The position numbers and the translations under genes are program-made. A stretch of 63,619 bases of DNA, filler included, from Octopus bimaculoides (lineage: Eukaryota): assembly GCF_001194135.2 (NCBI RefSeq). It is 5 parts of 5 records of this genome, joined end to end, with 100 filler letters (N's around TTAATTAATTAA, not from the genome) between each part and the next. Parts side by side here need not be neighbours in the genome. Positions count along the whole stretch, not along the records: positions 39,962 to 56,951 come from NC_068982.1; 4 more parts are not named here. The stretch is one strand, 5' to 3'. Shown here one piece after another: positions 39,851 to 57,051 of the stretch (the first letter of the stretch is position 1; each line of letters begins with the position of its first letter). The notes beneath the pieces were generated by a model. The model was not told the origin of the DNA. It saw only the letters and a list, made by a program, of their open reading frames with translations, and searched no databases.

Positions 39851-40075
39851 CTCTCTCTCTCNNNNNNNNNNNNNNNNNNNNNNNNNNNNNNNNNNNNNNN
39901 NNNNNTTAATTAATTAANNNNNNNNNNNNNNNNNNNNNNNNNNNNNNNNNNNNNNNNNNNNAGAGCTTTTTTATAGCAAATAAATAACAGCAAATGGCTC
40001 ACAGCTACTAATAACTGTGAAAAACGAAACCGGAAAAGTCATAGTAGTGACAGGGGAAACCCAAGTATCAATAAA

Positions 40076-40133
<58 letters not shown>

Positions 40134-40284
40134 GCACACATATACATATACACAAAGGGTAGATATACATATACACACACATGCATGTACATATATTCAC
40201 ACATACACACGCACATGCGCACATACACATACACATGCGTGTATATGCTTAGTACAGAATTCGTTGTATGTAGTACATATTATA

Positions 40285-40504
40285 CGAGTGGGGGGCTGAA
40301 AAGTGACCTGGTTTTGGGTAAAAGAAAATACAGTGAGGATCAGTTAATTATGATTTTATTCTACATATTTACCTCTCAGATTCACACACTTATTACAGCT
40401 GTCCTTCGGCTTTTCTAAGCCCTGTAAAAGAACTCGGAAGGTTGGCCTTCCAACCAGGCCTTTTGCAATACCCTTAAAGCCAGAAACTTTTCAGTGTCCC
40501 CTCG
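40285..40504. mobile_element. Mariner-type MITE
   Basis: TA|CGAGTGGGGGGCTGAAAAGT ... ACTTTTCAGTGTCCCCTCG|TA; 220 bp with TA flanks. Confidence 0.8.
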
Positions 40505-40724
40505 TATATGTGCGTGCAATAAATTTCACATATGTGTATGTTAACTTAAATACCATAAATTCTGAAGTGATCCATTTTTATGAGTAAAAATATAGAAATT
40601 GTATTAGGCTACGTCAGTATATCAATGTATGTGTATGTATTGTTGTTGTTTCTATTTGTTTTTGAACCTCAGTTCAACCATGGTTGATAATTATTGGCAA
40701 AAATCGTTCTGTCTGTGACCATCA

Positions 40725-40770
40725 ATGTCATCAGTTATAATTGATGTCAAACTAAAAGACAATAAGGCAG
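40725..40770 (+). CDS. SDR gene, first coding exon (MSSVIIDVKLKDNKA-G)
   Basis: Acceptor tttctatttgtttttgaacctcag ends at 40672. ATG at 40725 is open to a phase-1 donor CAG|GTATAC (40770/40771), which joins in frame to the phase-1 acceptor at 41175/41176. Confidence 0.6.
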
Positions 40771-40799
40771 GTATACGTTGACTTACGGGATAGAGACTC

Positions 40800-41040
40800 T
40801 TATTGAGTCATATAGACTCATAGGACCGATTTCCCGGTTTCCATGCCGTATATATTCCCCACCTGGACGAGACACCGATCCGTCGCAAGATGACTCATTT
40901 TTGCCAGCTGAGTGGACTGGAGTAACGTCAAATGAAGTGTTTTACACAAGAACACAACGCGTCGCCCGGTCTAGGAAGCGAAACCACAATCTTACGATCA
41001 TGAGTTCAACACTCTGACCACAAAGCTCATGCGCCTCCAC
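40800..41040 (-). mobile_element. tRNA-derived SINE inside the SDR intron
   Basis: Minus strand gtggaggcgcatg...gtggtcagagtg...gtggtttcgcttcctagaccggg head, resembling the head of 62386-62780, followed by gttgtgttcttgtgtaaaacacttc. Confidence 0.75.
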
Positions 41041-41175
41041 ATACGTTGATATATTTAGTTATTATCTATATCATGTAGAGTGAGACCACATAGGAAGGTT
41101 TTCTCTCTGTGTGTTTGCATTTGTCGTTTTGTTCTTATAAACTTTTAATACTCTCTTTGTATTTGTATATTCTAG

Positions 41176-41966
41176 GTAACCATAATGAAGAAAGGCAAAA
41201 AATTGCCATAGTTACTGGAGGAACAGGTGGCATAGGTTTCGCAACTTCCAAAGCTCTTGCTTCTCAAGGTTACAATTTAATTCTTGGTTATCTTTCTGAC
41301 AGTGAAAATGCCAAGAAATGCTTACAGGAATTGGAAACAGATTTCAACATCGAAGTTCGGACAATTAGCGGAGATGTTTGTGAAGAAGGCACTGTGAATT
41401 CGTATTTTAGCTGCTTGAATGAAATGAACGGCAAGCTCACTGCTATTGTTCACACTGCTGGACTTTTTAAACCAAATTCTTTTTCGAAGGACCCGAATAC
41501 TTGTTTTAGTACTTTTGAATACTACGACTATTACCAAGATATCTATCCTAAGTGTTTCATACGTTTAGTAGAAACGGGAATGAAGTTTATGGAAGATGGT
41601 CATGGCTATATAGTCTGCTTGTCAAGCCCTGGTTGTAATATCAATGACCATGTCCGACTTGGTTACATGATGCCAGGTACAGGGAAATGTGTACTTGAGT
41701 ACCTGTCTCGTCATTATGCTAAAATGTTAGCAAAGAGGGGAATCTCTTGTAATTGCATTGTTCCTGGATACATACAAACGAAACCATGGAAACTGAGAGA
41801 AAGCATTTTGGGTCCTGATGTTGGTTGCCAGAGAACACCGATGGGTCGATGGGGTCAACCCGAAGAAATAGGAGATTTTATTTCATATTTATGTTCTCCT
41901 AAAGCAAGTTTTCTTACCGGTGCTACCATTCCATTTGACGGAGGTTTGAGTCTTGGGAAGCAGTGA
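41176..41966 (+). CDS. Short-chain dehydrogenase/reductase, FabL/FabI (enoyl-ACP reductase)-like; main exon
   Basis: Uninterrupted frame with IAIVTGGTGGIG (Rossmann TGxxxGIG), GDV, IVHTAG, IVCLSSPG, YMMPGTGK (Y-x6-K), NCIVPGYIQT, TPMGRWGQPEEIG and FLTGATIPFDGG. Preceded by a pyrimidine tract and TAG acceptor; AATAAA at 42084 and 42140. Confidence 0.93.
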
Positions 41967-42779
41967 ATTTAAAAAGAGATAATTAACAGCTATCTCTGAG
42001 TTTTTCAGATCTTTATGGAAAAGTTATATTCAAAGTTAGAATATATTTCAATAATTTTTCATCTTATATGCATTGATAAAGAGAATAAAGTTTATTCGAC
42101 GAACTTTTTTTTACATAATCAGAATTCATTTGGTGGTTTAATAAATCAACTAATATTTTTCTTAATGGTATTCGTCTATTTTCATCGTACTGATTCCAAG
42201 AAATATTGATCTGTGATATTTTTTTATTTTTATATATTTACCATGCACCGTGGAAACTCTGTTTTACCACCTCAAACAATTTGTTGAAACCGCTTATAAA
42301 AGTGCACGGGGTATCTAAATTTTGGTGAAGTACTGATAAATGGAATGGCTAACAGAAGCATCTGCTTATAGTCTTTAATTTACTCGGAATAAAAAATAAC
42401 AAGTTAAATATTAAGCATTTGTTATTCATTAATTAGTTGATTTATTATTCAATCAATAAAACAATAAAAAAAACCTTGATTATATAATTCAAGCTGTAAT
42501 TGTTAGAGAATATATAAGAAAAAAATACCTACTATAATTCTTGTCTTGGCATATTTCCAAAGCTCCAGCTTGTCTTGCAGCGAATTTACATTCGTAAATG
42601 AGAAATTAAAAATACATGTAGAAGACTGTAAATGCAGAAGAATTATGTTTCCAAGAGATTTATATGTTTAATCTTATCAACTATCTAATGATCTTTATTA
42701 TTATAAACTGCCTAATGATCTTGTTTATCATTATAAATAGAGACATCAATTGTTGTGGCTGGCAATGTGTCAGGCTGCT

Positions 42780-43033
42780 GAACGAAGGATTTAAGAACAT
42801 ATGCACAGTCGTGTGGATAGTTCACTTCGAAACTACATGGTGCCAGGGTTCGATCCCACTGAGCGAGACTTTGGGCAAGTGTCTCAAGTTAGGTAATACT
42901 TTGCGAATAGTATTTGGTGGGCGAAAACTGTGCAGAAGCCCAACGAGTGTGTGTGTGTGTGTGTGTATGTATGTGCATATACACGCATATACATACATAC
43001 GACCATGCATAGATATATATACATACACACACA

Positions 43034-43118
<85 letters not shown>

Positions 43119-43460
43119 TTTATCTTTTATTTGTTCAATCATTAGACTTCGACCATGCTGGGGCACCGCCTTGAAAATTTTTAGCCGAATTAATCGATCC
43201 CAGTACGTTTTTTAAAGTCTGGTACTTTTTCTATCGGTTACTTTTGCCGAACCGCTAGAAAAGGGGACATAAACATACCAGCACCACTTGTCAAGCTGTA
43301 GTGGAAGACAAACACAGACACAAAGACACACACACGACTGGCTTCTTTCAGTTTCCGTTCACCAAATCCATTCACAAGGCCTCTATAGTAGAAGACACAT
43401 GTAGTGGGACTGAACCTGGAATCATGAGGTTAGGAAGCAAACTTCTTACCACACAGTAAT
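42780..43460. mobile_element. SINE family A: + strand 5' part (about 42780-42950) and - strand copy (about 43130-43460) around a (TA)n
   Basis: Head and core motifs of family A in both orientations. Confidence 0.75.
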
Positions 43461-43486
43461 GCGCGCGCGCCTATATACATGCATAT

Positions 43487-43554
<68 letters not shown>

Positions 43555-43599
43555 GTTATACATAAGAGAAATGAAAAATGAAAACAAACGAACATGTTA

Positions 43600-44290
43600 T
43601 TTAAATCATTTATATCACCGTCATATATGTTTCGATGGATACATTAAATTAATCTGGAAGGGAAAATAAGATGGAATAATGTATCAATCTCATCAGGGTG
43701 GAGATTATAAATAACAGTGTTCATTAATAAACCATGTTTACAAATGTAAGAAATTATAATATATAAAAACAAAAAGTGAATAGAGAACGCTTGTAGTTTT
43801 TAAAATACCGTTAACTAATTTGACGTCATTAGTCGAGAGAGGAAGAAAAAGAAAAAAGAAAGAAAATTAAAGAAGTAATGGAGGACTTAACAAATAGAAA
43901 GGTGAATGACAAATGGATAGAAATGATAAAGGAAAGAATGGAATGCGTGGATTGAAGAGAATAAAGTGAAAATTACCGATATAATTAGGCAAAGGGGAGC
44001 AGATATTATTTGAAATAGCTGAAAGTGTGTTTTTTCCAATGTAAACACCTGTAAACACGTTCTTTATAGGTGCTGACAAGTGTGTGTTTGGAAAAAAGGA
44101 TAAACAGTTGTTCATCCGTACAAAGAGGGCAAAAAGACTTGCCCTTATCATAAGGGGACGATCTTGACAAAATTTTTCAGTCTAAAGTAAATTGTTTATT
44201 ACAGTCTTTGAGATACCAAACTAGTTTACTAAGACCTGTAGTATTACGTTTACTAATTTATTCAAATGTAGAAAGATGATTAGCTATGCG

Positions 44291-44354
<64 letters not shown>

Positions 44355-44790
44355 TCAGTGGACGAAAGACCAACATAGAAAAATTCTTTAGTTTCTGAAG
44401 TAACTTTGCATTCGTAGACAAACATTTTTGATTTTGAAATTTCCATTGAGAACACATGTTCGATTTGGATCACAATTACAAGTAATATTACAATTAATAT
44501 TATTATTTAAAGAGCGATTATCATTATTTATATTATTGTTATTATATTTATTAAGGGAATCACTTTTACAGTTAAGAATATAATTGTTATGTGAAGAGAT
44601 AATCTGTAGGAGATTATTAATGTTGCAAAAACCAATTCTGATACGATGTGAGTTGAGAATAGAATGGTACCTCGAATTTTGGGGGAAGGTTCCTTTTGAT
44701 GGCTTTACGAAACAGGTAAGGAAGATTACTATTAATTTGTTTATCGTATGGAATAACAAGCCAAATAGTTTTATTTTGGCAATGCAATTT
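43600..44790 (-). mobile_element. Second Penelope-like element, 3' portion (linker, GIY-YIG endonuclease, 3' UTR)
   Basis: IISSHNNYIL...CNC...VYECKVTSETKEFFYVGLSSTE...KRIANH...TGLSKLVWYLKD...PYDKGKSFCPLCTDE...CLH. Confidence 0.85.
43616..43700 (-). ncRNA. Degenerate type I hammerhead ribozyme in the 3' UTR of the second Penelope-like element
   Basis: Minus strand: CACC-CTGATGA-GATTGATACATTA-(30-nt loop)-TAATGTATCCATC-GAAA-CATATAT-GAC-GGTG. Stems I and II pair, but the triplet is GAC rather than GUC. Confidence 0.7.
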
Positions 44791-45565
44791 ATAGGAAGAT
44801 TTCTGGAGTTATTCCTCAGTCTGGGTGTTTCACGTCACCACTCCTGTATGTGCCTTTGTCCCAGCTGTTGGTACATTTGGTATATAAGGGAGTTTGATTC
44901 AGCTGCCCTCGTCTGTACCTCATGTCGGGCTGTTTACTCTCCGGTATTGTGGAGAGGAGGATGTCTAATTCCTTTTTGAAGACACCTACTTCCACCTTAT
45001 GTAAATTTCTTAATTTTTGTGGCAGGGCATTGAAGAGCTGTGGGCTTTTGAATCCTAGACTATTGCAGTACCTGGTCCTGAATTTAGATGGAGTGGATGG
45101 TACCTTTAGTACAATACAATGGCAGCCAGTTCTAGCATTTCTACAACACTCAATGCCAAAGTTAGGTTCTAGTCCTTCTAGGGTTTTTCATATGTATATT
45201 ATTGCATATCTCTCACGCCTTCGCCCCAGGGCGTAAAGCTGTAGTTTTCTCAGCTTATCCGTGTAGCACTGTTTCAATCTTTTTAATTTAGTGGCATTGG
45301 ACTGCTTCAAGCTCCGCTGTTAGTTTGGCACTATGTAGTCCAGGCAGTAGTCCAGGCAGCTGAGAACAAAGGTTCTCCACGGGGTCAACATAGTTTATTG
45401 GTCTCTTGTCTTGAAGGACCTCGGGATCCATCCTGCCTGTTGTCTGCACTTTGCTGCCATCTTGATAATGTGCATATGAAATGATGCGTCATTGCACATA
45501 TTGCTTCCCCAAGCCTTTCACTGCCTGTGACTCTGGGATTGTAGCGCCTTCAGGTCTTGTAAATG
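44790..45565 (-). mobile_element. CR1-type LINE 3' portion
   Basis: AAKCRQQAGWIPRSFKTRD...LDYC...LRKLQLYALGRRRERYAII...LFNALPQKLRNLHKVEVGVFKKELDILLSTIP. Confidence 0.85.
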
Positions 45566-48500
45566 TATATATATTGTATATGTGTCTATGTGTATCTATC
45601 TGTCGCCGAGGTAAATCAGCGAGAAAATCAACAAATTGGTGTTTTACGAACGAAATCTTTTCAGATAGAATGAAATCTTTTCAGATAGATATTCCCTTGC
45701 CACTCTCGCAATGATAAACCTGTTGGAAACATGCAACCAGCGACGCCATTACTAATATATTGCGATATAGATAAATTATTTAACCCTTTCATGTAGAGCA
45801 TACCAACTAGTAATTATGTAAGATTAAGTTTGGTAGGGTTTGTTGAAAGAGAAAGAAAAACTTGTGGAAGCGAAATGTATAAGAAATTGGAATGAATAAG
45901 ATATTGGACTAAATACTCGTAGATCGTGAGTTCAAATCATCTTTTAGACATTTCGTTATCTCTCTCTCCTCTCATCTCTCTTTCTTTCTCTCTCTCTCTC
46001 CCTCCCCCTCTCTCTCTCTCCCTCCCCCTCTCTCTCTCTTTCCACTTCCCTCTTAGAGAAGGATATAATTTTATATGGGCTCAATTTTTCTGTCTACGAA
46101 GAGATCAGTAGGATAGATCACCCGAAGCATGATCTACTTTACATCACTGAATAAGTAAATATTTAACATTGTTTTAATGCTTTAAGGGTAGCTTACCTCT
46201 GTCATCATTGGGTAGATTGTATAATCATCAAATATTTCATTAACTTACAGCGATGTGTTCGTGCGATCGTATGGGTTTAGAGGAATACATGAGAAAACGT
46301 AGCAATACTCCGTCTCGGACGAGTTTCTGTAAAGATCTTGTTCCGACTTTTTGTTGGATCTTAATAGTCCTATTGTAATGCATAAATGCATGCTTAGTGA
46401 CTGGTGTGCAACAGTCCACATTACGTTAAATTTATGGTTCACAGACATCAAATACCAAGGAATTCTAGTGAGAATTCAACGTAATAACGTTTTATTAACT
46501 TTGACTCGCAAAGTCATTCAAGTCGCTAAAACTCTTTTAAAAATACATGAAGTAACTATTTCATGCCGTCACTCCCTCTGTAAATCCAAATCTACATGTA
46601 TGTGCAAAACACCAGTTATAAGATAGTTGTTGACTGTCATCAAGTCAAAAGTCTGTCTATTATTTACACGCATAACGCAGTGAGCTGGTAGAATCGTTAG
46701 CACGCGGGCAAAATGCGTAGCGGCATTTCTTCCGGCCTTACATTCTGGATACAAATTACGCCAACGCTACTTTATCTTAAAGTACCAGTTGATGTAATCT
46801 ACTAGCCTCAACGCCCACCCACCCGTAATTTCAGGCCTTGTGTATATGGTAGAAAGAAATATTTGCACGCATTTTACTCTAATGTGGTCAGTCAGAAATT
46901 ATTCTTCTAAATAAATTAGAAAATTTCATCTTGGTGATTATGCACGGTTTTGTAAAGGAAAGTGTTATGAGCGATTAGTTTTACCCCATTGTAAAATTAG
47001 TACTGATTAGTAGAATAATAATTAAATATTTAACGTGAAGTATATTTGCCACTTAAATGCGGCTAACCACTAAGGGTGAATGCTACTGTAGCTTGAAGTC
47101 TCAGGAGAACATCTCCTCCAGCTGGCTATTGACACACTTTCTATGCCCTATCAGTATTTGCGAAGGGAAGTCATCCTTCCCATCGTCGACCTGATGTGAT
47201 ACGCATGGACCCTGGTTAACAAAATATTGTCACTCAGCTTTAGTTAAAAATCTTATATTGTAAGAGTTATTTCCCATGTGACCAGTTAGCCTGATTGAAA
47301 ATGTTTACTTTTTTCTTTTCTCAATCACCAGCATTATCGAAATATGTTGTTGTGGAACACATCCCAGTTATCAATGTATAAAGCAGTTGAGAGAGATATT
47401 TTCCTTCGTATAGCTAACGTTTCTCTAATAGCTGGAACACCAATATAGCGTGGGTAATGAATATACATGTGCACGGTGTCATCTCAATATATTTAATAAA
47501 AATATTTTGTCTCGCTGTGAAACTTAGCTCTGTGCTGTAACCACAGAACATACTTCAAGGATTTTCTCTGAAAGCGTGGTGGGCCATGTTGAAAAAACTA
47601 ATGTAAACTGAAGTCAATTTCCCTTTCTTGATCAAAAGTAACCATCAAATATTGATAACCCTTATTGACTTCAGTGAAGTTAATAAGGCATATTCACTGG
47701 TATATTCTCTGCGAGAATACAACCTAAGCCTAGCTAGCTTCCATACGAAAAGAGTAAGAGTATTGTGTAATTTAGGAGTATGTTAATATTGTTTAGGAGT
47801 AAGATGATTATGGCTAAAGCATCAGCACAATGCTCCAATACTGAATTTAAGACAGGAGTCCCCGAGTTATTTCTCTCAGTTTTTCCATTTGAATTAAGTC
47901 TTGCTTTTCATTATGTGGTTGATTTGTATCCTACATCCAATACTAAAATAACATCGTAGAAGCATCAACCTTCAGTTAGATATATTATTTGACTTCCAGT
48001 AGCTTCACGTGCGATGACGAAATGGTGATGAATGTGAAGCTGGAAAACTTAGAGGATTAAGAAATATGTGTTCCAATTACACTGAAAGACCGAATGTAAT
48101 TTCTTGGGTAATTTCAGTTATGTAAAAGGCAGAAAAAAAACTTGAAGGGCAGAAAAATACTTGAATCGTGTTCGGGTGGAAGCAATGTGAAGCCTACAGG
48201 TTCTGAAAGTAGAGTCCATTTTTGTAACCAGACAGGTAGGAGCAAAATAGCTGAGTGTGAATGGCACTGGAAAAACAGCTCCATTTTACCTGAACTCCCA
48301 CCGATATGCAGTGTTAATGTCCAATTTGGTAAACAGTTTTCGAGTTGTTGAAGAATAATTAAATACAGTTATATCTTAACTTACGTCGCTTCAGATTACG
48401 TCTTTTTCAACTTAAAGTGATCTTGGTGGGGTGGGGGTTAAGAACATTAATCGATTTATCGGACTTTACGTCGATCACAGCGAAAATATATAAGTTAGAA

Positions 48501-49347
48501 ATTAAGAAACACCTAAATAAAGTACATGTAAAAATATGCACACATCATTTATTAAAACAGATATGAACAAATAATTAAAAAAGTTTTTTTGTTTTCCAAG
48601 TTACCTCATTTTTCTTTATATTGCATGTCTTTGAAGCAATTACTGACATAAGTTGAGGTATGCCTCTAATTGCTAAAATAAACATTTGTCATTATCTCTT
48701 TTTAAAAATTTCAAATTCTGCCGAGGTCGTCTTTGCCTTTCATTCTCTCGGAGTCGATAAAATAAATACCTGTAAACCACTGGGATCAATGTAATTGACT
48801 TCAACACCTCTCAAAATTGCCGGCCATGTGCCAAAATAAGAAAGGATTATCTATATTTAAAAATTAATGTAGAAGTTATCTCCCTGATTTTTAATCTTCA
48901 CTTTCTGTAATTTTTTCTTTGCTTGTAAACATCTGCTTTTAATTATTCCCCTTGCATGTACGAAGTATATGAAAAGAATTATTAATGTTTGTAAACGTTG
49001 CGGTTAAATAATTGCAGATAATTTTTTTAATTTATGTTTTTAAGAAGGGACGGGGTGGATAACTATGTCTGTTTAATGTTGGATAGAAAGTTCGTATCTA
49101 TACAGTATTTAATCTTCCCGGAGAAAAATTTTAGTGAACCAACTTCAGATAATACAGATATTCATTATACAAAAAGTTAATATCTGAAACCGAAATATAG
49201 CAACAGAGTGGCAAAGACATCTCGATAAATTAATCCATTTATAAAGTTTCCAGATTAAATCCAAATCATTTGTAGTCGATTAGTCCAACAGAACTACACA
49301 AATTGATGAAATTCAATAACATCTACTAATGGGACATCTTCCCCCCT

Positions 49348-49384
<37 letters not shown>

Positions 49385-49422
49385 CATTCATATATGTATC
49401 TGTGTGTGTGTGTGTGTGTGTG

Positions 49423-49457
<35 letters not shown>

Positions 49458-49537
49458 GCTGCATACATACACGTGTGTACATACGAGCGTGCGCGCAAGC
49501 ACACACGCTCACACACTAACACACGCATACAAGTGTG

Positions 49538-49627
<90 letters not shown>

Positions 49628-52600
49628 TAAAGAGACAAAGAAAAAAGAGAGATAGGAATTTTTTTTAAACGCAGAAATTTCATGCTTTCCTTATTTTTAT
49701 GTATTCGTAATATTAAAGACGTATATTATTAAAGCTAGACGTTATTTGAAAATATCTAGCTTCAATAACATTTGAAAAATTAAAATTTCCTTTGTAAGTT
49801 AGTGTTAATAACATAAATATGCATAGCCTTTTATCTTTAAATCATATTCGCTCTCAAACCCTGGTTACCTCCCCTATTAACACCTGTTACCTCTTTCCTC
49901 TGCTTTGCTGCCACTAATAGATATGCTTTTATATCTTGTTTGGATCGTTTTTACGTTTAATAAGGAAGCTTCTTATTTATCTTCTTTATTTTATTTTATT
50001 TTATTGCATTTTCTTTTATAACACTCAACAAAGCGTTTGCTGGTGGGGGTGGGTGCTCTTTTGTAACTGATAACTTACCTTTGTAGCAGGATTATTTAGT
50101 ACATACCTCAAACAGCAGCTCACTGCTTGGGAATCGAACCTGAATCAATGTATTCACATGGACAAATAGCAGGATGTTGTTAAGGATTGATGACATCAAT
50201 AAAAAACTGAACAATCAAATCAACAGATCCAGCAGATGCTTAACTCATTAAATTTCGGTGTTGTAAACAATCACTTTTTGGCACAAACAACATATAGGAT
50301 TGTCATTAATAATTTTGTCTTTGGCTTCCTTTTCTGAAACAGACAGTAGCTGTATATGGTTTGCTTTTCTGCTAGCTCACCATTTTCTGTAAAACAGCCA
50401 AGAGCACGGTGTAGGAATTTACGGCACTCAAGTTCGGCTGCGGAATTCGACGATGACAGCGATGAATTCAGTCCACACAAGACAACTTTCATCATCATTC
50501 GAATCTGCCAGAACATCAGCACATTTCATTTAAGGTATTCGTAACCACTTCGAATTGGCGTGTTTGCAACCACCGAACTAATGTCCGATTTGGCATTAGT
50601 TCTTCAGGATTAGTCTCTTTTCGACTTTTGTCTACATCAGTTTGTATAACATTCTGGAAATTAATTATTGTTGATTTCTATGCTGATTTTAAGGTCAAAA
50701 GATCCGAAAGTTTGTATTATGTCCTTCCTTAGCTTATCTATAGTGTACCCATTTGCGGTTTTAGAGCTATCACGTGATAGAAAATAGCAGGGGAGATTTT
50801 TTTTAAATTTAAGGTATCTAACATATACGACCCTATGAGCGCACAGGTCTCTGTACTAGCGAATGATTCCATACTTACGTTAAATGAACCATCCGAAGAA
50901 AACCTCTCGGCTCAGGCTGTGTCCTGATCAAAAAACAAAGTTTTCTGGCATGCATTATAATTTTTATTCGGCTATCACGTATTCTGTTTTAAATTTTTAC
51001 AAAATTTAGTACGTCTTTTTAATGACTCTTTAGAGATTGATTAATAAAATATTTACAATGTCACACTGAATAAATCTAGCATTTCTTTTATTTGTAATGC
51101 TGTCAAACCAACATACTGTTCCGTTGCACAAGGTTGATGGCTACTTTTATCTCATAAATTTTAGAATATTCTTGCTAGCGAGACAAATCTCAGACTTAAC
51201 TGGGTTTATTAACCTATATTTAAGGTTAAAAAACAAGGTTAATCTTATGGTTCTTGATGGTGATAAAGTCGTTACTTTTTGATGGTGCCTGTTCTGTCAT
51301 CAATTTCTATCCTTACTGCTATGTTTTTGAGGGTTTTTTTTGTTTCTATAATTATGTCATTATAAGCTGTGAGCTGGTTCATAGATAATTTTGCGTAAGC
51401 TATTTTCCAACTCATAAATGTATCTAGTTTTATTCATAGAATAGCAGGTCTTTTTTGGATAGTTTTAAAATGTTTTAATACCAGCCGTTAGCATATTTTT
51501 AAAGGGATTAAAGAATTTAACACTCGCTATCAAATCCAGAATATCCGATCGGAGTTTTTTTAATGGTTTTTTTATTGTTGATTAGTATCTTCTTGACAAT
51601 AAATGGTCGTACACTGCTCCGCAGAATCATCGGCGCATACTTTCTATCTCTTAACCTCAACGAGGCCCACTATTTTCTCAAACAGCCTTCGTGCATATTA
51701 TTCATTCGATAGTGTTGGTATGTATTTTTCTCGGGTTGTTAAGGTTTAACAAATTCTTTATCAAAATACTATATGGAGAACTTTCTTCCATGTAACTTGT
51801 ATTTAAATATTTCAAGCTGTGAACAAAGCTTCTTAGTTTGCGATATGCAGAGTGTAATATGGGAGTAGAGTAAGTGATCAAACTCGTTTCATAAAACAAA
51901 GAGCAGAGCATTCAATACAACGAATATAGAGCTGATATTTGAAACCTATAAAAAAAAAGCCAGCTCATGTTACTAGTACTTTCAAAATCATTCAATAGCA
52001 CACATAATGATTCAGTTCATGTAAGAGATCAATATGAGAAATTATTGTCTTTAGAGTGCAGTGGAATGGCAGAAATCGTAACCCACAGGGCATTATTTCG
52101 TCCAGTGTTTTGTTTTGTCCCTCCGCGTTCAAATCTCACTGGTATCATCTTTGCATTGTCTCTCTGTGGAGTAGATAAAATAAACATTAGTCAAACACTG
52201 CTAAATTTAGTTTTGCGTCAAAAATTAAAAAAATATTATTGCGTCACTGAAGACTTGGACTTTTAATTTCATTGCATTACAATGTTGACAATAACATCTG
52301 TTACTTCCTCTCGTGCTTTCGTTTAATTGCAGTTAGTCATCATTGAATGAAATCAGTTGTTGATTTGGTCCGAAATATGAACAATACAATAGGTGTTGGA
52401 AGCGTCAAAATGGTGTAATTATTAGATCAATGACTATAGTGTGTGACCTCTTTTTTCCGCTATTGTATCGGTCTGCAAAATAGGCAATCACGAGTGTAAA
52501 ATTAGCTTAAAAATCAAACAGTCGTCATGTAAGTAATGATAAATTAAATAAATAAAAATTGAGGTGATAGAAAGGATTTAAAAAGGGTCAATGACTTCAT

Positions 52601-53852
52601 AAGTATAATATAGTCTAGCCAGGATCGCAGATCATTTGATAAATTTTTACTTGAAAAATAACAAATAGTTATAGCCGATCATAATTAAAATTTCGTTTCG
52701 GTCCATTTGAGTATTGTTTAGATTTTTATTTCCTTTCACAAACTAAGAGAGAGACTTCACTTAAGACTATTTTGGTGGGGTCTCTAGATTCAGCTCGTTG
52801 CCCATTAACATAATTATCTATATTTGTGCCATTCACCCATTTGGGCTATTTCCTTTCATTTATTTTATTATGAATTATGTTAATTACATTAGCCATTGTT
52901 CGCAATTCTTTTTCTAAATATAGAAATTCTATCAAATGATCGACAGGTTTGGTTTAAGCTTCTTTTTTTTTATGAAAGTTTTATAGACTTGAAAATATCC
53001 ATAGTTATCCCTTCCGTAAGCGCGTAAATACACTCGAGAGATAAATTCTTAATTCTGAAAATTATCTTCCCGTATATTTTAATAGTTAACAATTACAGTT
53101 AGGATTTTGTTTTCTTTCTCCAACTAAATGAGAAATTGCAATTATTTAAGAATGTTTTGCTTACGTCATTTATTTCATTACCTTTTATCTTAGTGATTTT
53201 GTCTTACTACAAAAGAATAACAAAATAATATTGACTTTTGATTAAACTGAAACAAATTTTTTTTAATGTAAAAGAAATGTGATTTTGAAAAAGAAATTTT
53301 TGTTCCATATTTATTTACAAGTATACACGTGTTGTCAATAATGACGATAAATATGTTTATTATACTTATATGCATTGAAAATGATAATGAAACAGTTAAA
53401 CTACTGTTAATTGCATATTATAATATATTTTGCATTGAATATTTTAGAATTTTGTAGTTTTTTAATGTCTATGTTGAACTCTTATTCATTTTTCAAAACA
53501 CACACACACACACACACACACTAGCATAATTCATTGAACAAGTTGACTTTCTCTTTTTCTTCTTTGGAAAATAACGAATTCATTACGTATTTAGTTATTT
53601 CTCTTTGGGTATTATATTTGTTTTTAATTTCCAGTTCATTAAAATGTTAATTTATTGCATGAAATTCAATGTATAATTCCATAGATCAGGTACGGTCCCA
53701 GGAATTTTTCGAAAGAAGGGCACAAAGTCAGAAGGGAATACAATTCCAAGAGAAAAGGGCGCACTTATTTTCTTGAGGGGGGCACTTGGATCCGCCCTTG
53801 TAAACGGCTAATATTTTGACGTTAAACTGATGCTATTTTCCCGTGCCCTTTG

Positions 53853-53889
<37 letters not shown>

Positions 53890-54239
53890 CGTGTGTGTGT
53901 GTGTGCGTGCGTGCGTGTGTGTGTGTGTGTATAAATAATAAAATAATATATATATGCATATATACATACGTATACGTACATACTTAGATGTATACGCATA
54001 TACATATGCATATGTGAGCACAGGACGTCACAAAACATAAACAACAAAAAATACGAAGTACGAAGACATAGAATAAGGGCTTTTTTGCAAGCAACGAAAG
54101 AAACAAATGGAAAAGAAGACAAGCAACACAAGGAACGACCTTTCATCAGTTGTCGGCTGTTTTTCTAATCCGTATTTCGAGCAATTCACGATAAGATAAA
54201 ACAGTTGCTCCCGCAAAGCAAACAATTTTTTTAAATACT

Positions 54240-54580
54240 TGCTTCGTACTGTGATCATTGATCCTGGAACTTATTCTATCGGTTTCTTTTGCCGAATTGC
54301 TAAGTTGCGAGAACGTATACACACCAAACACCAATCTCAAGCAGTAGTAGAATACACACACGCACACACGCACACATACACACGACACACACTCGCGCGC
54401 GCACATATGTATGTATGCATGAATACGACAGGTTTCTTTCGGTTTCCATCTGCCAAATCCACCCATAAGGCTTTGGTCGGCCCGAGGCTATAGTATACTT
54501 TGCTGAAGGTGCCACGCAGTGGAACTAACCCGGAACCATATGGTTGGGAAGCAAGCTTCTACTACTCAGCCAAGCCCGCG
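54240..54580 (-). mobile_element. SINE family A copy
   Basis: Reverse complement of the family A head and core with an internal (CA)n. Confidence 0.8.
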
Positions 54581-56559
54581 CCTAATCAGAGTGCGGTAGA
54601 ATAATTCCTGTATTTTGCTATTGTGAGGTGTGTGTCTGGGTGGTCATAACAATTGACACGTCTTCAAAATAAGTTTCATTATTGAAATATTATGTTTTAT
54701 AATATTACCATTGTCGAATAGGTCCGCTGCTTAATATTTTTAGACAAAGTGCTTATTTCAAAATTTAAACCTTTTTGAAGTTGAACAGTAATTTTGTTGA
54801 GAATCTGTTTTAACTTTTTTGCGAAAAAATGATAAACCACACTTTGAGTGAAAACAAAAAGGTAAACCAACACTAGATTAAAATTGGCAAACTACCACCT
54901 AAACAGATGCAGCTTCAACAGCCTAGTGTACGAAAATACATAGAACATTCCAATACCACGTGTTACAAAAAAAAACGTATAGTTGTATGACTGCATAATG
55001 TATAATTGTATAGCTGTATTACAGAAAAAAAGGCTTTTTTCTTTTCTATTCATATATCTTGTATCTAGAGAAAGTGCGAAAGTAAGAACCGAAACTTAAA
55101 AAATTGTAACAATAGGATATTTTCTGGTTTAGTTGAGAGATGGACGAAAATTTGTGTGAGATTCAAGCACTAAATAGTTATTTATTGTTAACAAAGATGT
55201 TGTTGCGATGAAAAAGAAAAATTATATTTAAGCCAAGTGAGTCAGTTCGTGTGTATGTACGGGAGAGAGTCTATGTATCATCAAGGACAGTAGCCATGAG
55301 TGGCGTAGATTCTTGGAACTAACTGACTAAAACTGTGTCGCAACCACTGTCGTTGTCTTTGTCGATGTGCAGCCGACATTAGTTCGTACAACCCCTGGTT
55401 TTGACTGGGCTGCGACCACAGTCGATGGTCTATCACAGAAAAGGCGCTAAAGACGAACTTGTTAATGACATTTCCAAATGTTTATATAACACTGGGATCC
55501 TAACGAGTTAAACATCTGCTGGATCTTTTGTATTATGCGGTTGGTCAATGGCTACTGAAACAAAACAAAAAAAAAGGTCTTTAATGTGCTTACCTGAGAC
55601 TTACTGACGTTATCAATCCTTGACAATATCATATCTATTGTTTAGTTATTTTTCCGTCCGAACTCTGATTCAATTTCGATTCCTCGGCAGTGAGTTGGTG
55701 TTTGCGAATCTGCCAAATATTCCTGCTACATGTTTAAATAAATTACCATAATAAATATTAAAAAATATATTTGCTATTGTCTCGTGGTGACAGACACTTT
55801 CATTGAGAATTTACTTTATTAATGCCCACAGCCTACTCTGACACAACAACAAAGCAACTGAGCAAAGCATACATATTAGGTATACTCCTCCACACCACTC
55901 ACACAATCAAAGCTTATGAATCCAAATCTTCTAAGTACTTAACAAGTGACTATGCTACAGGAGCACTAGCGAAGAACAACGCATAAAAGGCATTAAAAAA
56001 TCGCCCATTCCAAATTGATGATTTTGCCCATTGCATAAGTAATTAAGATAAATCAAGCGTATAATTATATTCATTCGATGACACCCTGGAATTTTAGGTA
56101 TCGATCAGGCGAAAATCGATGATTTGTAACATATTTTTTTAAAAGTTCGAATGTTCTTAAGGGCGTTCCTCTGTTTGCTTTTCACTTCCCCCACTCTACC
56201 TTTAAATTTCTTCGCATTATAATTTGAAATGTTAGATACCTATCTCTCTATCCGAAAATGGAGATCGGACCGACCTAATGTCCATATGCTTCCACTACTG
56301 GTTGTATATTCTTGATTTTTTGCGAACTACATCTGCCAACATTATGAAGTAATTCCGAGCTCCCACAAACAGCTGTCGGACCTGTAACACCATATCTTCT
56401 CCCCTTAATTTTTGTGTCTTAGTACTCTGTGTAAATTTACTCTGTCAATATAAAAACATCTATATATTTATAAAATTATATTAAGAGAGAAAGGGCGAAA
56501 ACGACTAATCTCCAACATGCCTGAAGTGCCAATACCTTCATAAAACTACCAAAAACTCC

Positions 56560-56597
<38 letters not shown>

Positions 56598-57051
56598 AAG
56601 AACGACCGTACGAACCCAAAAGGAGAAATGGTGACGAATGGAAAACAGGCTCCTTTTATAATAACGCGTCACACGGTCGAACACAAAAATATATCAAATG
56701 ATATATATGTTATACTTCGATAACATAAAGAACTAAGAAATGCCAGTAAGATACAAGATAGGACACAACCGATAAAGATGAATAACAGTAAGATTTATTG
56801 TAGCATTAAATTGTATGTCTGTGTGTGTGTGAATGCTACATAATGAAACACAATAAAAGACAGGCCGTCATGTAAAGAAAAGAGTGTGTGTAAGTGATAC
56901 ATGTATGTGGGTACGAGAGATACACAGTATTGAAATAGAGTCAGTAACACGNNNNNNNNNNNNNNNNNNNNNNNNNNNNNNNNNNNNNNNNNNNNTTAAT
57001 TAATTAANNNNNNNNNNNNNNNNNNNNNNNNNNNNNNNNNNNNNNNNNNNN

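What the first reader, a model, noticed from the sequence alone, without database searches (positions are those of the whole stretch)
40725..41966. Bacterial-style FabL/FabI-like enoyl reductase embedded in an animal genome: candidate domesticated horizontal transfer
Seen: the entire SDR fold lies in one exon. The active site reads LSSPG...GYMMPGTGK (Tyr-x6-Lys, not YxxxK), NNAG is replaced by HTAG, and the usual helix-4 Asn is absent. The only modelled intron lies in a short N-terminal leader and contains a host SINE. Known: Y-x6-K marks divergent SDRs such as E. coli FabI (YNVMGLAK) and B. subtilis FabL (SSLG...YTTVGVSK), whereas the animal fatty-acid-synthesis enoyl reductases (FASN ER domain, MECR) use the unrelated MDR fold. 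Inference: a bacteria-derived C=C reductase integrated into the cephalopod genome, possibly acting in specialised lipid or secondary metabolism. The intron and SINE context argue against contamination.
Basis: partly seen in the sequence, partly recalled or inferred. Interest (0 to 1): 0.8.

Follow-up and report, generated by a model that had tools for sequence, protein, structure and literature searches.

The report
Cyanobacterial-type reductase gene in octopus
This is a real, spliced, selectively maintained octopus gene for a small NAD(P)H-dependent reductase. Its relatives are cyanobacterial and algal enzymes, but amphioxus, acorn worms and sea anemones/corals also carry it, so any gene transfer was ancient rather than an octopus novelty.

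Summary
The sequence observation holds. A 278-codon gene (exon 1 40725-40770, intron 40771-41175, exon 2 41176-41966) encodes a short-chain dehydrogenase/reductase (SDR). The whole fold lies in exon 2, with TGGTGGIG, HTAG, Ser149, Tyr163-x6-Lys170, and Tyr where FabL has its Asn.

It is a host gene, not contamination:
- It is colinear with Octopus sinensis, and the exon-2 protein is identical to an O. bimaculoides RefSeq protein.
- A second paralogue shares the same splice acceptor.
- Synteny with Argonauta is conserved.
- dN/dS is 0.03-0.17.

The protein belongs to a compact family centred on cyanobacteria and algae (44-48% identity). The next relatives are at about 33%. It fails the FabL model cut-off (108 vs 328 bits), so enoyl reduction is inferred from the motif alone.

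The family is not cephalopod-specific. It also occurs in hexacorals and anemones, enteropneust hemichordates, amphioxus and bdelloid rotifers.

In my ML trees:
- Cephalopods sister to amphioxus is as good as the best tree (ΔlnL 0.2).
- One clade of cephalopods, amphioxus, one hemichordate type and cnidarians is not rejected (KH p 0.20).
- Cephalopods sister to cyanobacterial group 1 is disfavoured (p 0.035).
- Rotifer copies have a separate origin, grouping with green algae.

Best reading: ancient microbial-type gene, probably inherited and widely lost. Moderate interest.

The parts
40725..40770 (+). Candidate first coding exon (ATG; MSSVIIDVKLKDNKA plus the first base of a Gly codon)
   Evidence: Read. 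Identical to the N-terminus of O. vulgaris CAI9717707.1 (P0381). The exon and its donor are 100% conserved in O. sinensis, against about 95% identity in the surrounding DNA. RefSeq models instead use first exons 37-43 kb upstream, outside this piece.
40771..41175 (+). Phase-1 intron in the N-terminal leader (GT...AG, 405 nt)
   Evidence: GT at 40771-40772 and a pyrimidine tract followed by AG at 41174-41175. The O. sinensis paralogue P0002 uses the same acceptor position and phase (L090). The Argonauta gene, like the others, carries the whole SDR fold on one exon behind a far-upstream start.
40819..41045 (.).
   Evidence: blastn finds copies at 76-81% identity at L101 6501-6643, L101 36311-36404 and L090 4067-4194. 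The orthologous copy in O. sinensis is 92% identical. ARAGORN and Rfam find nothing tRNA-like.
41176..41966 (+). Main exon: entire SDR fold (262 aa) plus stop TGA at 41964-41966
   Evidence: Pfam adh_short_C2 4.3e-37. tblastn identity is 99% to O. sinensis P0001, 85% to the paralogue, 78% to Argonauta and 46% to Moorena. Identical to the O. bimaculoides protein P0380. AlphaFold2 model has pLDDT 83 and pTM 0.85, with a Rossmann beta-alpha pattern.
41214..41237 (+). Cofactor-binding glycine motif TGGTGGIG
   Evidence: and the alignment. Relatives have TGGTRGIG. Cephalopods have lost the Arg: Gly in octopods, Ser in the cephalopod-like sequences.
41451..41462 (+). HTAG, in place of the usual NNAG/HNAG at the end of strand beta-4
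41544..41552 (+). YPK in helix 4: Tyr123 occupies the position of the FabL/FabG catalytic-tetrad Asn
   Evidence: phmmer alignment to FabL 3oic, where FabL has 'NAK'. Y123, P124 and K125 are invariant in the family alignment A1.
41622..41687 (+). Active-site segment: Ser149 (SSPG), Tyr163 and Lys170 (Y-x6-K)
   Evidence: Aligned with FabL SSLG...YTTVGVSK. S149 and K170 are invariant and Y163 is at least 90% conserved in A1. Y-x6-K holds in cyanobacterial, algal and animal members. The loop 152-161 is modelled with low confidence.
42084..42089 (+). AATAAA polyadenylation-type signal about 120 nt after the stop codon
   Evidence: Pattern search. Function not tested.

Best explanation
The locus is an ordinary, functional nuclear gene of an octopus, most likely Octopus bimaculoides. 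It encodes a roughly 30-kDa NAD(P)H-dependent oxidoreductase of the short-chain dehydrogenase/reductase superfamily.

Family placement (shown): the protein belongs to a compact, uncharacterised family whose core is in cyanobacteria (two groups) and photosynthetic eukaryotes. The family is defined by VTGGTRGIG, HNAG, a long beta4-alpha4 loop, YDYYQxxYPKCFIR, SSPGCN and FLCS motifs. Its catalytic Ser...Tyr-x6-Lys has the spacing of the bacterial enoyl-ACP reductase FabL.

Mechanism (inferred):
- The Rossmann domain binds NAD(P)H through TGGTGGIG.
- Lys170 holds the nicotinamide ribose.
- Tyr163 and Ser149 polarise and protonate a carbonyl-conjugated substrate while hydride goes to the beta-carbon.
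- That is, it reduces a C=C bond of an enoyl-thioester-like or enone substrate.
- A carbonyl (keto) reduction is the main functional alternative.

Origin (inferred):
- The family entered eukaryotes from cyanobacteria or algae.
- The cephalopod copy is old. It pre-dates the Octopus/Argonauta split and a duplication within octopods, and probably the split from the 61%-identical cephalopod-like sequences.
- It most likely descends from a gene already present in early bilaterians or eumetazoans. That gene survives in amphioxus, acorn worms and hexacorals and was lost from most other animals.
- It is therefore probably not a transfer specific to cephalopods.
For: A real host gene under selection:
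- The piece is colinear with the O. sinensis chromosome (86-95% nucleotide identity over about 10 kb).
- The exon-2 protein is identical to the O. bimaculoides protein.
- A second paralogue lies 55 Mb away and uses the same phase-1 acceptor.
- A BTB gene is nested antisense in the leader intron in both O. sinensis and Argonauta.
- dN/dS is 0.034 against the O. sinensis orthologue (dS 0.095), 0.17 against the paralogue and 0.12 against Argonauta.
- Transcript-like contigs of the 61% homologue occur in at least 17 sequencing runs.

Family placement:
- Cyanobacterial 278-aa SDRs are 44-48% identical, then similarity drops to about 33%.
- Profile searches add algae: Chromera, Micractinium, Coccomyxa, Alexandrium and a diatom.
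- NJ bootstrap is 100 for cyanobacterial group 1 plus all eukaryotes against group 2.

Catalytic motif:
- It aligns with FabL, the best-scoring solved structure by sequence (2.8e-23).
- Y-x6-K is conserved family-wide.
- The FabL signature is taken from the review PMC9260719.

Older than cephalopods:
- Homologues exist in Nematostella, Exaiptasia, Actinostola, Orbicella and Oculina; Branchiostoma (3 species); and Ptychodera and Glandiceps.
- Cephalopods plus amphioxus costs ΔlnL 0.22.
- A clade of cephalopods, amphioxus, hemichordate type A and cnidarians costs ΔlnL 13.6 (KH p 0.20, SH 0.29).
- Cephalopods plus cyanobacterial group 1 costs ΔlnL 20.5 (p 0.035).
- Cephalopod and amphioxus proteins share IRLVE, RHYAK, ITCN and a shortened loop.
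- The anemone and coral copies share an intron and an MsrA neighbour, so the gene is old in that phylum too.
Against: - The unconstrained ML and NJ trees do not recover an animal clade (NJ support 0-1%). Cnidarians plus hemichordate type A sit beside cyanobacterial group 1 (local support 64-90).
- Putting all non-rotifer animals in one clade is borderline (ΔlnL 27, KH p 0.07).
- Rotifer copies clearly have another origin, grouping with green algae and Plesiocystis (local support 100). So repeated transfer of this gene into animals does happen.
- No intron position is shared between phyla. Amphioxus and the cephalopod-like copy are intronless. Octopods have only a leader intron. Cnidarians have one internal intron. 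That fits separate captures of an intronless gene.
- Among molluscs only cephalopods were found.
- My ML program is home-made: a rate matrix derived from BLOSUM62, 256-258 alignment columns, and NNI plus backbone-SPR searches.

On function:
- NCBIfam scores for FabG and acetoacetyl-CoA reductase models equal the FabL score.
- The fold search gives generic SDRs.
- Cyanobacterial neighbourhoods are not conserved, and the two family-range long proteins examined (P0246, P0245) carry no second recognisable domain.
- The Asn of the FabL signature is missing.
Confidence: 0.6

Rival explanations
1. One reading: a bacterial (cyanobacterial) enoyl reductase gene was transferred directly into the cephalopod lineage and domesticated there. 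The copies in other animal phyla would be independent captures of the same gene.
For: - Patchy distribution, with cephalopods the only molluscs found.
- The whole fold sits in one exon, and the cephalopod-like homologue is an intronless ORF with its own ATG on a gene-poor 181-kb contig.
- No intron is shared with cnidarians.
- Independent capture is demonstrated for rotifers.
- The unconstrained trees do not unite animals.
Against: - Cephalopods as sister of cyanobacterial group 1 is disfavoured (ΔlnL 20.5, KH p 0.035). Cephalopods as sister of amphioxus is as good as the ML tree.
- Cyanobacterial group 1 excludes all animals (support 98).
- Identity to amphioxus (46-47%) equals identity to cyanobacteria (44-48%).
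- Cephalopods and amphioxus share derived residues and loop shortening.
Confidence: 0.25
2. No transfer into animals at all: an ancient eukaryotic gene lost from most lineages, with the cyanobacterial copies either ancestral through the plastid or taken from eukaryotes.
For: - Rooted on cyanobacterial group 2, the ML trees place algal and some animal branches below group 1.
- A single animal clade is not rejected.
Against: - Apart from the five animal groups and one amoebozoan transcriptome sequence of the cyanobacterial group-2 type, the named eukaryotic members are all photosynthetic lineages. No fungal, choanoflagellate, sponge, vertebrate, arthropod or nematode sequence appeared among the listed best hits of the sequence and profile searches. 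The unannotated representative search cannot be checked for this.
- The next outgroups are all bacterial.
- The deep branching is short and prone to long-branch attraction.
Confidence: 0.08
3. Functional rival: the enzyme is a carbonyl (3-ketoacyl, acetoacetyl-CoA or other keto) reductase, as the RefSeq name 'FabG-like' implies, or it acts on a non-lipid small molecule. On this view the Y-x6-K spacing is not diagnostic.
For: - NCBIfam top hits are 3-oxoacyl-ACP reductase at 111 bits, FabL at 108, FabG at 106 and acetoacetyl-CoA reductase at 105.
- PDB sequence hits after FabL are FabG and acetoacetyl-CoA reductases.
- Structural neighbours are sorbose reductase, FabG, hydroxysteroid dehydrogenases and AerF.
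- No fatty-acid-synthesis genes lie next to the cyanobacterial orthologues.
Against: - The position four residues before Lys, where ketoreductases have their Tyr, is Pro/Gly in the whole family. The conserved Tyr is seven residues before Lys, as in FabL, FabI and InhA.
- FabL is the best single match by sequence and has the highest identity among the structural hits (29%).
Confidence: 0.35
4. Contamination or an assembly artefact: a cyanobacterial or algal fragment mis-assembled into the octopus scaffold.
For: None found.
Against: - Orthologous, colinear loci exist in the window species, O. sinensis and Argonauta, with matching annotated proteins in O. vulgaris and O. bimaculoides.
- Host repeats and microsatellites lie within 100-700 bp.
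- The leader is spliced.
- GC3 is 0.32 in a 35% GC piece.
Confidence: 0.01

Closest known systems
FabL (YgaA), enoyl-ACP reductase III of Bacillus subtilis (PDB 3oic/3oid)
   Same: - Best-scoring solved structure by sequence (2.8e-23).
- About 250-280-aa single-domain SDR.
- Ser...Tyr-x6-Lys with identical spacing.
- Closer to FabG-type SDRs than to FabI.
   Different: - Only 29% identical.
- Scores 108 bits against the equivalog cut-off of 328.
- The Asn of the Asn-Ser-Tyr-x6-Lys signature is Tyr.
- Three extra residues between Ser and Tyr, and a longer beta4-alpha4 loop.
- The basic residues after strand 2 (FabL YARSKK) are LSDSE here.
- No link to a fatty-acid-synthesis gene set.
- Activity unknown.
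Uncharacterised cyanobacterial 278-aa 'SDR family oxidoreductase' (Crocosphaera, Moorena, Nostocales, Lyngbya; group 1) and its 260-264-aa sister group (Synechococcus PCC 7336, Rivularia)
   Same: - Same family: 44-48% identity over the full length.
- All signature motifs shared, including YPKCFIR, SSPGCN and Y-x6-K.
   Different: - The octopus protein has a loop 15 residues shorter, and 6 fewer residues before the TPMGRW motif.
- Gly instead of Arg in the glycine motif, and HTAG instead of HNAG.
- A spliced leader.
- The cyanobacterial genes stand alone with no conserved neighbours.
Animal genes with relatives only in marine microbes, such as the deuterostome 'novelties' of Simakov et al. 2015 (PMC4729200) and the algal-type genes of Ni et al. 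2012 (PMC3494510)
   Same: - Metabolic enzyme gene.
- Closest non-animal relatives in cyanobacteria and micro-algae.
- Retained in slowly evolving marine invertebrates.
- Either ancient transfer or massive loss can explain the pattern.
   Different: - Not restricted to deuterostomes: also present in cnidarians, cephalopods and rotifers.
- No paper that discusses this gene turned up in five topical literature searches.
FabG / acetoacetyl-CoA reductase (classical SDR ketoreductases), the name RefSeq gives this gene
   Same: Same fold and size, and similar model scores.
   Different: Those enzymes use Tyr-x3-Lys and an Asn in helix 4. Here the Tyr is three residues further upstream and the Asn is absent.

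Membership tests
SDR superfamily (Pfam adh_short / adh_short_C2) | Profile match above the curated cut-off | tested here: met
   PF13561 scores 128.4 bits against a cut-off of 27. PF00106 scores 82.5 against 26.6.
SDR superfamily (Pfam adh_short / adh_short_C2) | Rossmann fold with an N-terminal TGxxxGxG cofactor motif | tested here: met
   TGGTGGIG at 41214-41237. The AlphaFold2 model shows a beta-alpha-beta pattern with pTM 0.85. Foldseek gives TM 0.75-0.85 to many SDRs.
Classical SDR ketoreductases (FabG type) | Asn...Ser...Tyr-x3-Lys catalytic tetrad | tested here: not met
   The residue four before Lys170 is Pro. The Tyr is seven residues before Lys. The helix-4 Asn is replaced by Tyr123.
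FabL (enoyl-ACP reductase III) | NCBIfam equivalog NF005975 at or above its cut-off | tested here: not met
   108.1 bits against a cut-off of 328. FabG-type models score the same.
FabL (enoyl-ACP reductase III) | Tyr-x6-Lys spacing | tested here: met
   YMMPGTGK aligns with FabL YTTVGVSK. The signature is as stated in PMC9260719.
FabL (enoyl-ACP reductase III) | Extended signature Asn-Xn-Ser-Xn-Tyr-x6-Lys | tested here: not met
   Ser, Tyr and Lys are present. The Asn position (FabL 'NAK') is Tyr ('YPK'), invariant in the family.
FabL (enoyl-ACP reductase III) | NADPH-dependent reduction of trans-2-enoyl-ACP; complementation of fabI(ts) | not testable with these tools
   This needs biochemistry or genetics. 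Sequence hint only: the basic residues FabL has after strand 2 are absent, and the Arg of the glycine motif is lost in cephalopods.
FabI / InhA (divergent SDR enoyl reductases) | Specific sequence relationship to FabI, and the Ser/Tyr-Xn-Tyr-x6-Lys signature with an internal Met | tested here: not met
   No FabI or InhA chain is among the best 60 PDB sequence hits or the 50 best structural hits. Only the Y-x6-K spacing is shared.
Cyanobacterial/algal 'YPKCFIR' SDR family (unnamed) | Full-length similarity well separated from other SDRs, plus the shared motifs VTGGTxGIG, YDYYQxxYPKCFIR, SSPGCN, Y-x6-K and FLCS | tested here: met
   Family members score 400-460 bits against the family profile, versus 160 bits or less for the next SDR group. 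The motifs are seen. NJ bootstrap is 100 for group 1 plus eukaryotes.
Lineage-specific horizontal transfer into cephalopods | Recipient sequences nested in, or sister to, a donor clade, to the exclusion of other animals | tested here: not met
   Cyanobacterial group 1 is monophyletic without animals (support 98). Cephalopods plus group 1 costs ΔlnL 20.5 (p 0.035). Cephalopods plus amphioxus costs ΔlnL 0.2.
Lineage-specific horizontal transfer into cephalopods | Absence from other animals | tested here: not met
   Present in Hexacorallia, Enteropneusta, Cephalochordata and Bdelloidea.
Lineage-specific horizontal transfer into cephalopods | Stable integration in the host genome (not contamination) | tested here: met
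   Colinearity, synteny, host repeats, splicing and purifying selection.
Vertically inherited ancient metazoan gene | Animal sequences form one clade | tested here: inconclusive
   Not recovered in the best trees, but not rejected: KH p 0.14 with 36 taxa, p 0.20 for the core clade and p 0.07 for all non-rotifer animals.
Vertically inherited ancient metazoan gene | Shared intron positions or synteny between phyla | tested here: not met
   No intron is shared between cephalopods, amphioxus and cnidarians. The neighbours differ: BTB in octopods, MsrA in cnidarians, a RAG1-like gene in amphioxus. Chromosome-scale linkage was not testable.

The most novel reading that the evidence does not exclude
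The same cyanobacterial/algal reductase gene was captured independently by four or more animal lineages: cephalopods, amphioxus, acorn worms (twice), hexacorals and bdelloid rotifers. It was kept under selection in each because it supplies a C=C (enoyl or enone) reduction step that animals otherwise lack. One candidate role is a free-standing reductase in specialised lipid, polyketide or pigment metabolism. That would make it a recurrent 'hot' transfer and a new enoyl reductase class distinct from FabI, FabL, FabK and FabV.
Probability: 0.2. Interest if true: 0.7.

Novelty: new member of a known kind. Interest (0 to 1): 0.45.

Why it matters
- Animals reduce enoyl intermediates with enzymes of the medium-chain dehydrogenase/reductase (MDR) fold: the FAS ER domain and MECR. 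A conserved SDR with the FabL-type catalytic spacing, kept for hundreds of millions of years in cephalopods, amphioxus, acorn worms and hexacorals, points to an unstudied metabolic step shared with cyanobacteria and algae.
- The family is small, sharply delimited and has no characterised member. One enzyme assay would therefore annotate hundreds of cyanobacterial, algal and animal genes.
- For evolution, it adds a case to the debated class of microbial-type genes in slowly evolving marine invertebrates.
- It also shows how a finding that looks like a lineage-specific transfer from one genome dissolves into an older, multi-phylum pattern once sampling is widened. RefSeq's 'FabG-like' name is probably misleading.

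Tried and rejected
- **Bacterial genome scan.** I recovered cyanobacterial contexts one by one instead. They show no conserved neighbourhood, so context gives no functional clue.
- **Domain fusions.** The long family relatives examined carry either a second SDR domain or no other recognisable domain. Uninformative.
- **Fold search.** It gives undifferentiated SDR hits. FabL ranks 8th. It does not discriminate function.
- **Rfam and ARAGORN.** Only sub-threshold 'miRNA' hits on dinucleotide microsatellites, and no tRNA-like SINE head.
- **Other ORFs of at least 90 aa in 42664-54466.** No Pfam match; no second gene recognised in the piece.
- **Identity of the 61%-identical 'cephalopod-like' sequences.** Not resolved. 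No names are attached, the run accessions are not cited in any held paper, and no synteny with Octopus is detectable in the 20-kb locus. 'Decapodiform cephalopod' remains an inference from the tree (support 99-100).
- **The 47-aa N-terminus of O. sinensis isoform X1 as a mitochondrial presequence.** Dropped. It comes from an alternative exon 37 kb upstream that overlaps an antisense BTB gene, and other models do not share it.
- **GC content as a transfer signal.** Rejected, because the cyanobacterial orthologues are equally AT-rich.
- **The algal-type SDR family of Ni et al. 2012.** It is reported as a large multi-copy animal family, unlike this one. I judged it to be a different family but did not compare sequences.
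Full report
**What is in the sequence**

The piece 39962-56951 is AT-rich (35% GC). It is full of dinucleotide microsatellites and holds one convincing gene.

- The ORF 41109-41966 contains a complete short-chain dehydrogenase/reductase (SDR) domain. Pfam adh_short_C2 scores 4.3e-37 and adh_short 3.7e-23.
  - ATG at 40725.
  - Exon 1 at 40725-40770 (MSSVIIDVKLKDNKA plus one base).
  - GT at 40771.
  - A 405-nt phase-1 intron ending in a pyrimidine tract and AG at 41174-41175.
  - Exon 2 at 41176-41966.
  - Total 278 aa.
- This is precisely the O. vulgaris annotation CAI9717707.1.
- The exon-2 protein is identical to O. bimaculoides XP_014773842.1, so the window is most likely from that species.
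- In the alignment with B. subtilis FabL, Tyr163 and Lys170 fall on FabL Tyr151 and Lys158. The Asn of FabL's 'NAK' is a Tyr, 'YPK'.

**Is it a host gene?**

Yes.

- The piece is colinear with O. sinensis chromosome CM016860.1 at 134.4 Mb (86-95% identity).
- O. sinensis has a second copy 55 Mb away on the same chromosome. It is 85% identical and uses the same phase-1 acceptor, with its first exon 15 kb upstream.
- Argonauta has the gene too. As in O. sinensis, a BTB-domain gene lies antisense inside the long leader intron of the RefSeq-type model.
- The intron of the short model contains a dispersed repeat, with three further copies in about 160 kb of Octopus DNA. I could not show that it is a SINE.
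- Nei-Gojobori dN/dS is 0.034 against the O. sinensis orthologue, 0.17 against the paralogue and 0.12 against Argonauta. That is clear purifying selection.
- The first exon is the uncertain part. RefSeq models start 37-43 kb upstream. The 40725 exon and its donor are 100% conserved in O. sinensis.

**What family is it?**

- Searches of 5.8 billion proteins give the octopod copies first, then three unnamed sequences at 61-62%. About 60 cyanobacterial 278-aa SDRs follow at 44-48%, amphioxus at 46-47% and corals at 40-41%. Similarity then drops sharply to about 33%.
- Profile searches, and a search seeded with an unnamed relative, add more members:
  - anemones;
  - two enteropneust hemichordates (Ptychodera, Glandiceps), each with two divergent types;
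  - bdelloid rotifers;
  - green algae, a diatom, a dinoflagellate and Chromera;
  - one myxobacterium.
- All share YDYYQxxYPKCFIR-like, SSPGCN and FLCS motifs and Y-x6-K.
- Against curated models the protein is not FabL. It scores 108 bits against a cut-off of 328 and ties with FabG and acetoacetyl-CoA reductase models.
- The predicted structure (pLDDT 83) matches SDRs generically. FabL has the highest identity among the hits, 29%.
- According to the review PMC9260719, FabL is defined by Asn-Xn-Ser-Xn-Tyr-x6-Lys and strict NADPH use. Here the Asn is missing, and so are the basic residues after strand 2.
- Cyanobacterial orthologues have no conserved neighbours, and the long family relatives examined carry no informative second domain.
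- Enoyl (C=C) reduction is therefore a reasonable inference from the catalytic spacing and nothing more. I put it at about 45%, against about 35% for keto reduction.

**Where did it come from?**

- NJ with 86 sequences and 100 bootstraps:
  - cephalopods, amphioxus and cnidarians each get 100;
  - cyanobacterial group 1 is monophyletic without any animal (98);
  - group 1 plus all eukaryotes against cyanobacterial group 2 gets 100;
  - the deep order is unresolved.
- I wrote a small ML program to test topologies: a reversible matrix derived from BLOSUM62, empirical frequencies, four gamma categories, NNI and backbone SPR.
- With 36 taxa, a clade of cephalopods, amphioxus and cnidarians costs 7.1 lnL (KH p 0.14, SH 0.35).
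- With 41 taxa, including hemichordates, more rotifers and green algae:
  - cephalopods plus amphioxus costs 0.22 lnL;
  - cephalopods plus amphioxus plus hemichordate type A plus cnidarians costs 13.6 (KH p 0.20);
  - all non-rotifer animals costs 27.0 (p 0.07);
  - cephalopods as sister of cyanobacterial group 1 costs 20.5 (p 0.035);
  - rotifers group with green algae and Plesiocystis (local RELL 100), a separate acquisition.
- Rare changes point both ways.
  - Cephalopods and amphioxus share IRLVE, RHYAK, ITCN and a shortened beta4-alpha4 loop.
  - However, no intron is shared between phyla. Amphioxus and the cephalopod-like copy are intronless. Cnidarians share one internal intron and an MsrA neighbour among themselves.

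**Conclusion**

The gene is microbial in type and very probably reached animals by transfer from cyanobacteria or algae. The evidence does not support a cephalopod-specific event from a bacterium. The better-supported picture is an old animal gene, at least as old as the cephalopod stem and plausibly bilaterian or eumetazoan. It survives in a few slowly evolving marine lineages. This resembles the 'deuterostome plus marine microbe' genes discussed by Simakov et al. 2015.

Independent captures remain possible and are demonstrated for rotifers. Five topical literature searches turned up no paper on this gene. RefSeq names its members 'FabG-like' or 'FabL-like'.

It is a solid but moderate finding: an uncharacterised enzyme family worth one biochemical assay, and a cautionary case for calling transfer from a single genome.

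**Limits**

- The ML software is home-made and the alignments are short (256-258 columns).
- The taxon labels of several key sequences are unknown: the 61% 'cephalopod-like' group, P0135, P0066 and P0069.
- Unannotated animal genomes could not be searched.
- No expression data for the octopus gene itself were examined.

Noticed in passing
window 40040-40240, 42940-43120, 49390-49530, 53880-54030, 54350-54430: Long CA/TG/TA dinucleotide microsatellites. They create spurious ORFs and sub-threshold Rfam 'microRNA' hits (mir-297, mir-466, MIR7533), which are artefacts of low complexity.
   Followed up: partly
window 40281-40507: A second dispersed repeat, upstream of the gene. It is 84% identical to a stretch of the O. 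sinensis paralogue locus (L090 13429-13654, opposite orientation).
   Followed up: no
L101 14249-28760 (O. sinensis) and L102 20489-29089 (Argonauta): A roughly 600-aa BTB-domain gene lies antisense inside the long leader intron of the RefSeq model of the reductase gene. The arrangement is conserved between the two octopod genera. The alternative first exon of O. sinensis isoform X1 (L101 15072-15212) falls within its span.
   Followed up: partly
L088 1-3482 and 10001-10795 (Branchiostoma lanceolatum): The intronless amphioxus homologue lies about 6.5 kb from a gene with the full set of RAG1 domains (a RAG1-like gene).
   Followed up: no
L089 (Orbicella) and L103/L104 (Nematostella): Coral and anemone homologues share a phase-0 intron at ...ELL|VRYYA..., just after the catalytic Lys. 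They also share a neighbouring methionine sulfoxide reductase A gene. The gene was therefore already in the hexacorallian ancestor.
   Followed up: yes
proteins P0399, P0419, P0152 (bdelloid rotifers) against P0400, P0417, P0378 (green algae) and P0420 (Plesiocystis pacifica): Rotifer copies carry the green-algal/myxobacterial variant (YPRAFKRG, GLRHV) and group with those sequences at local support 100. This is an acquisition separate from the cephalopod gene.
   Followed up: yes
proteins P0393/P0394 against P0395/P0416/P0421 (Ptychodera, Glandiceps): Acorn worms have two divergent types of the gene. One sits next to cnidarians and the other nearer to algal sequences.
   Followed up: partly
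window 41214-41237 and alignment: Cephalopods alone have lost the Arg of TGGTRGIG (Gly in octopods, Ser in the 61% relatives). They also have acidic residues after strand 2. This may mean a shift from NADPH to NADH.
   Followed up: no
proteins P0078-P0097 (metagenomic; some named 'enoyl-ACP reductase III' by JGI): In P0079, the one member of the next-closest SDR group that I read and aligned, the residue seven before the catalytic Lys is Trp, not Tyr. The other members were not checked. Their automatic name is doubtful if they share this.
   Followed up: no
L002 10001-10786 (ENA contig ctg117197l, 181 kb) and L091-L100: The 61%-identical homologue is a complete intronless ORF with its own ATG, in gene-poor 33% GC DNA. 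It is seen as 1.3-1.8-kb transcript-like contigs in at least 17 sequencing runs.
   Followed up: partly
protein P0228 (Stygamoeba regulata transcriptome, MMETSP): An amoebozoan transcriptome holds a sequence of the cyanobacterial group-2 type, with short loops and a C-terminal extension. It could be a real gene or culture contamination.
   Followed up: no
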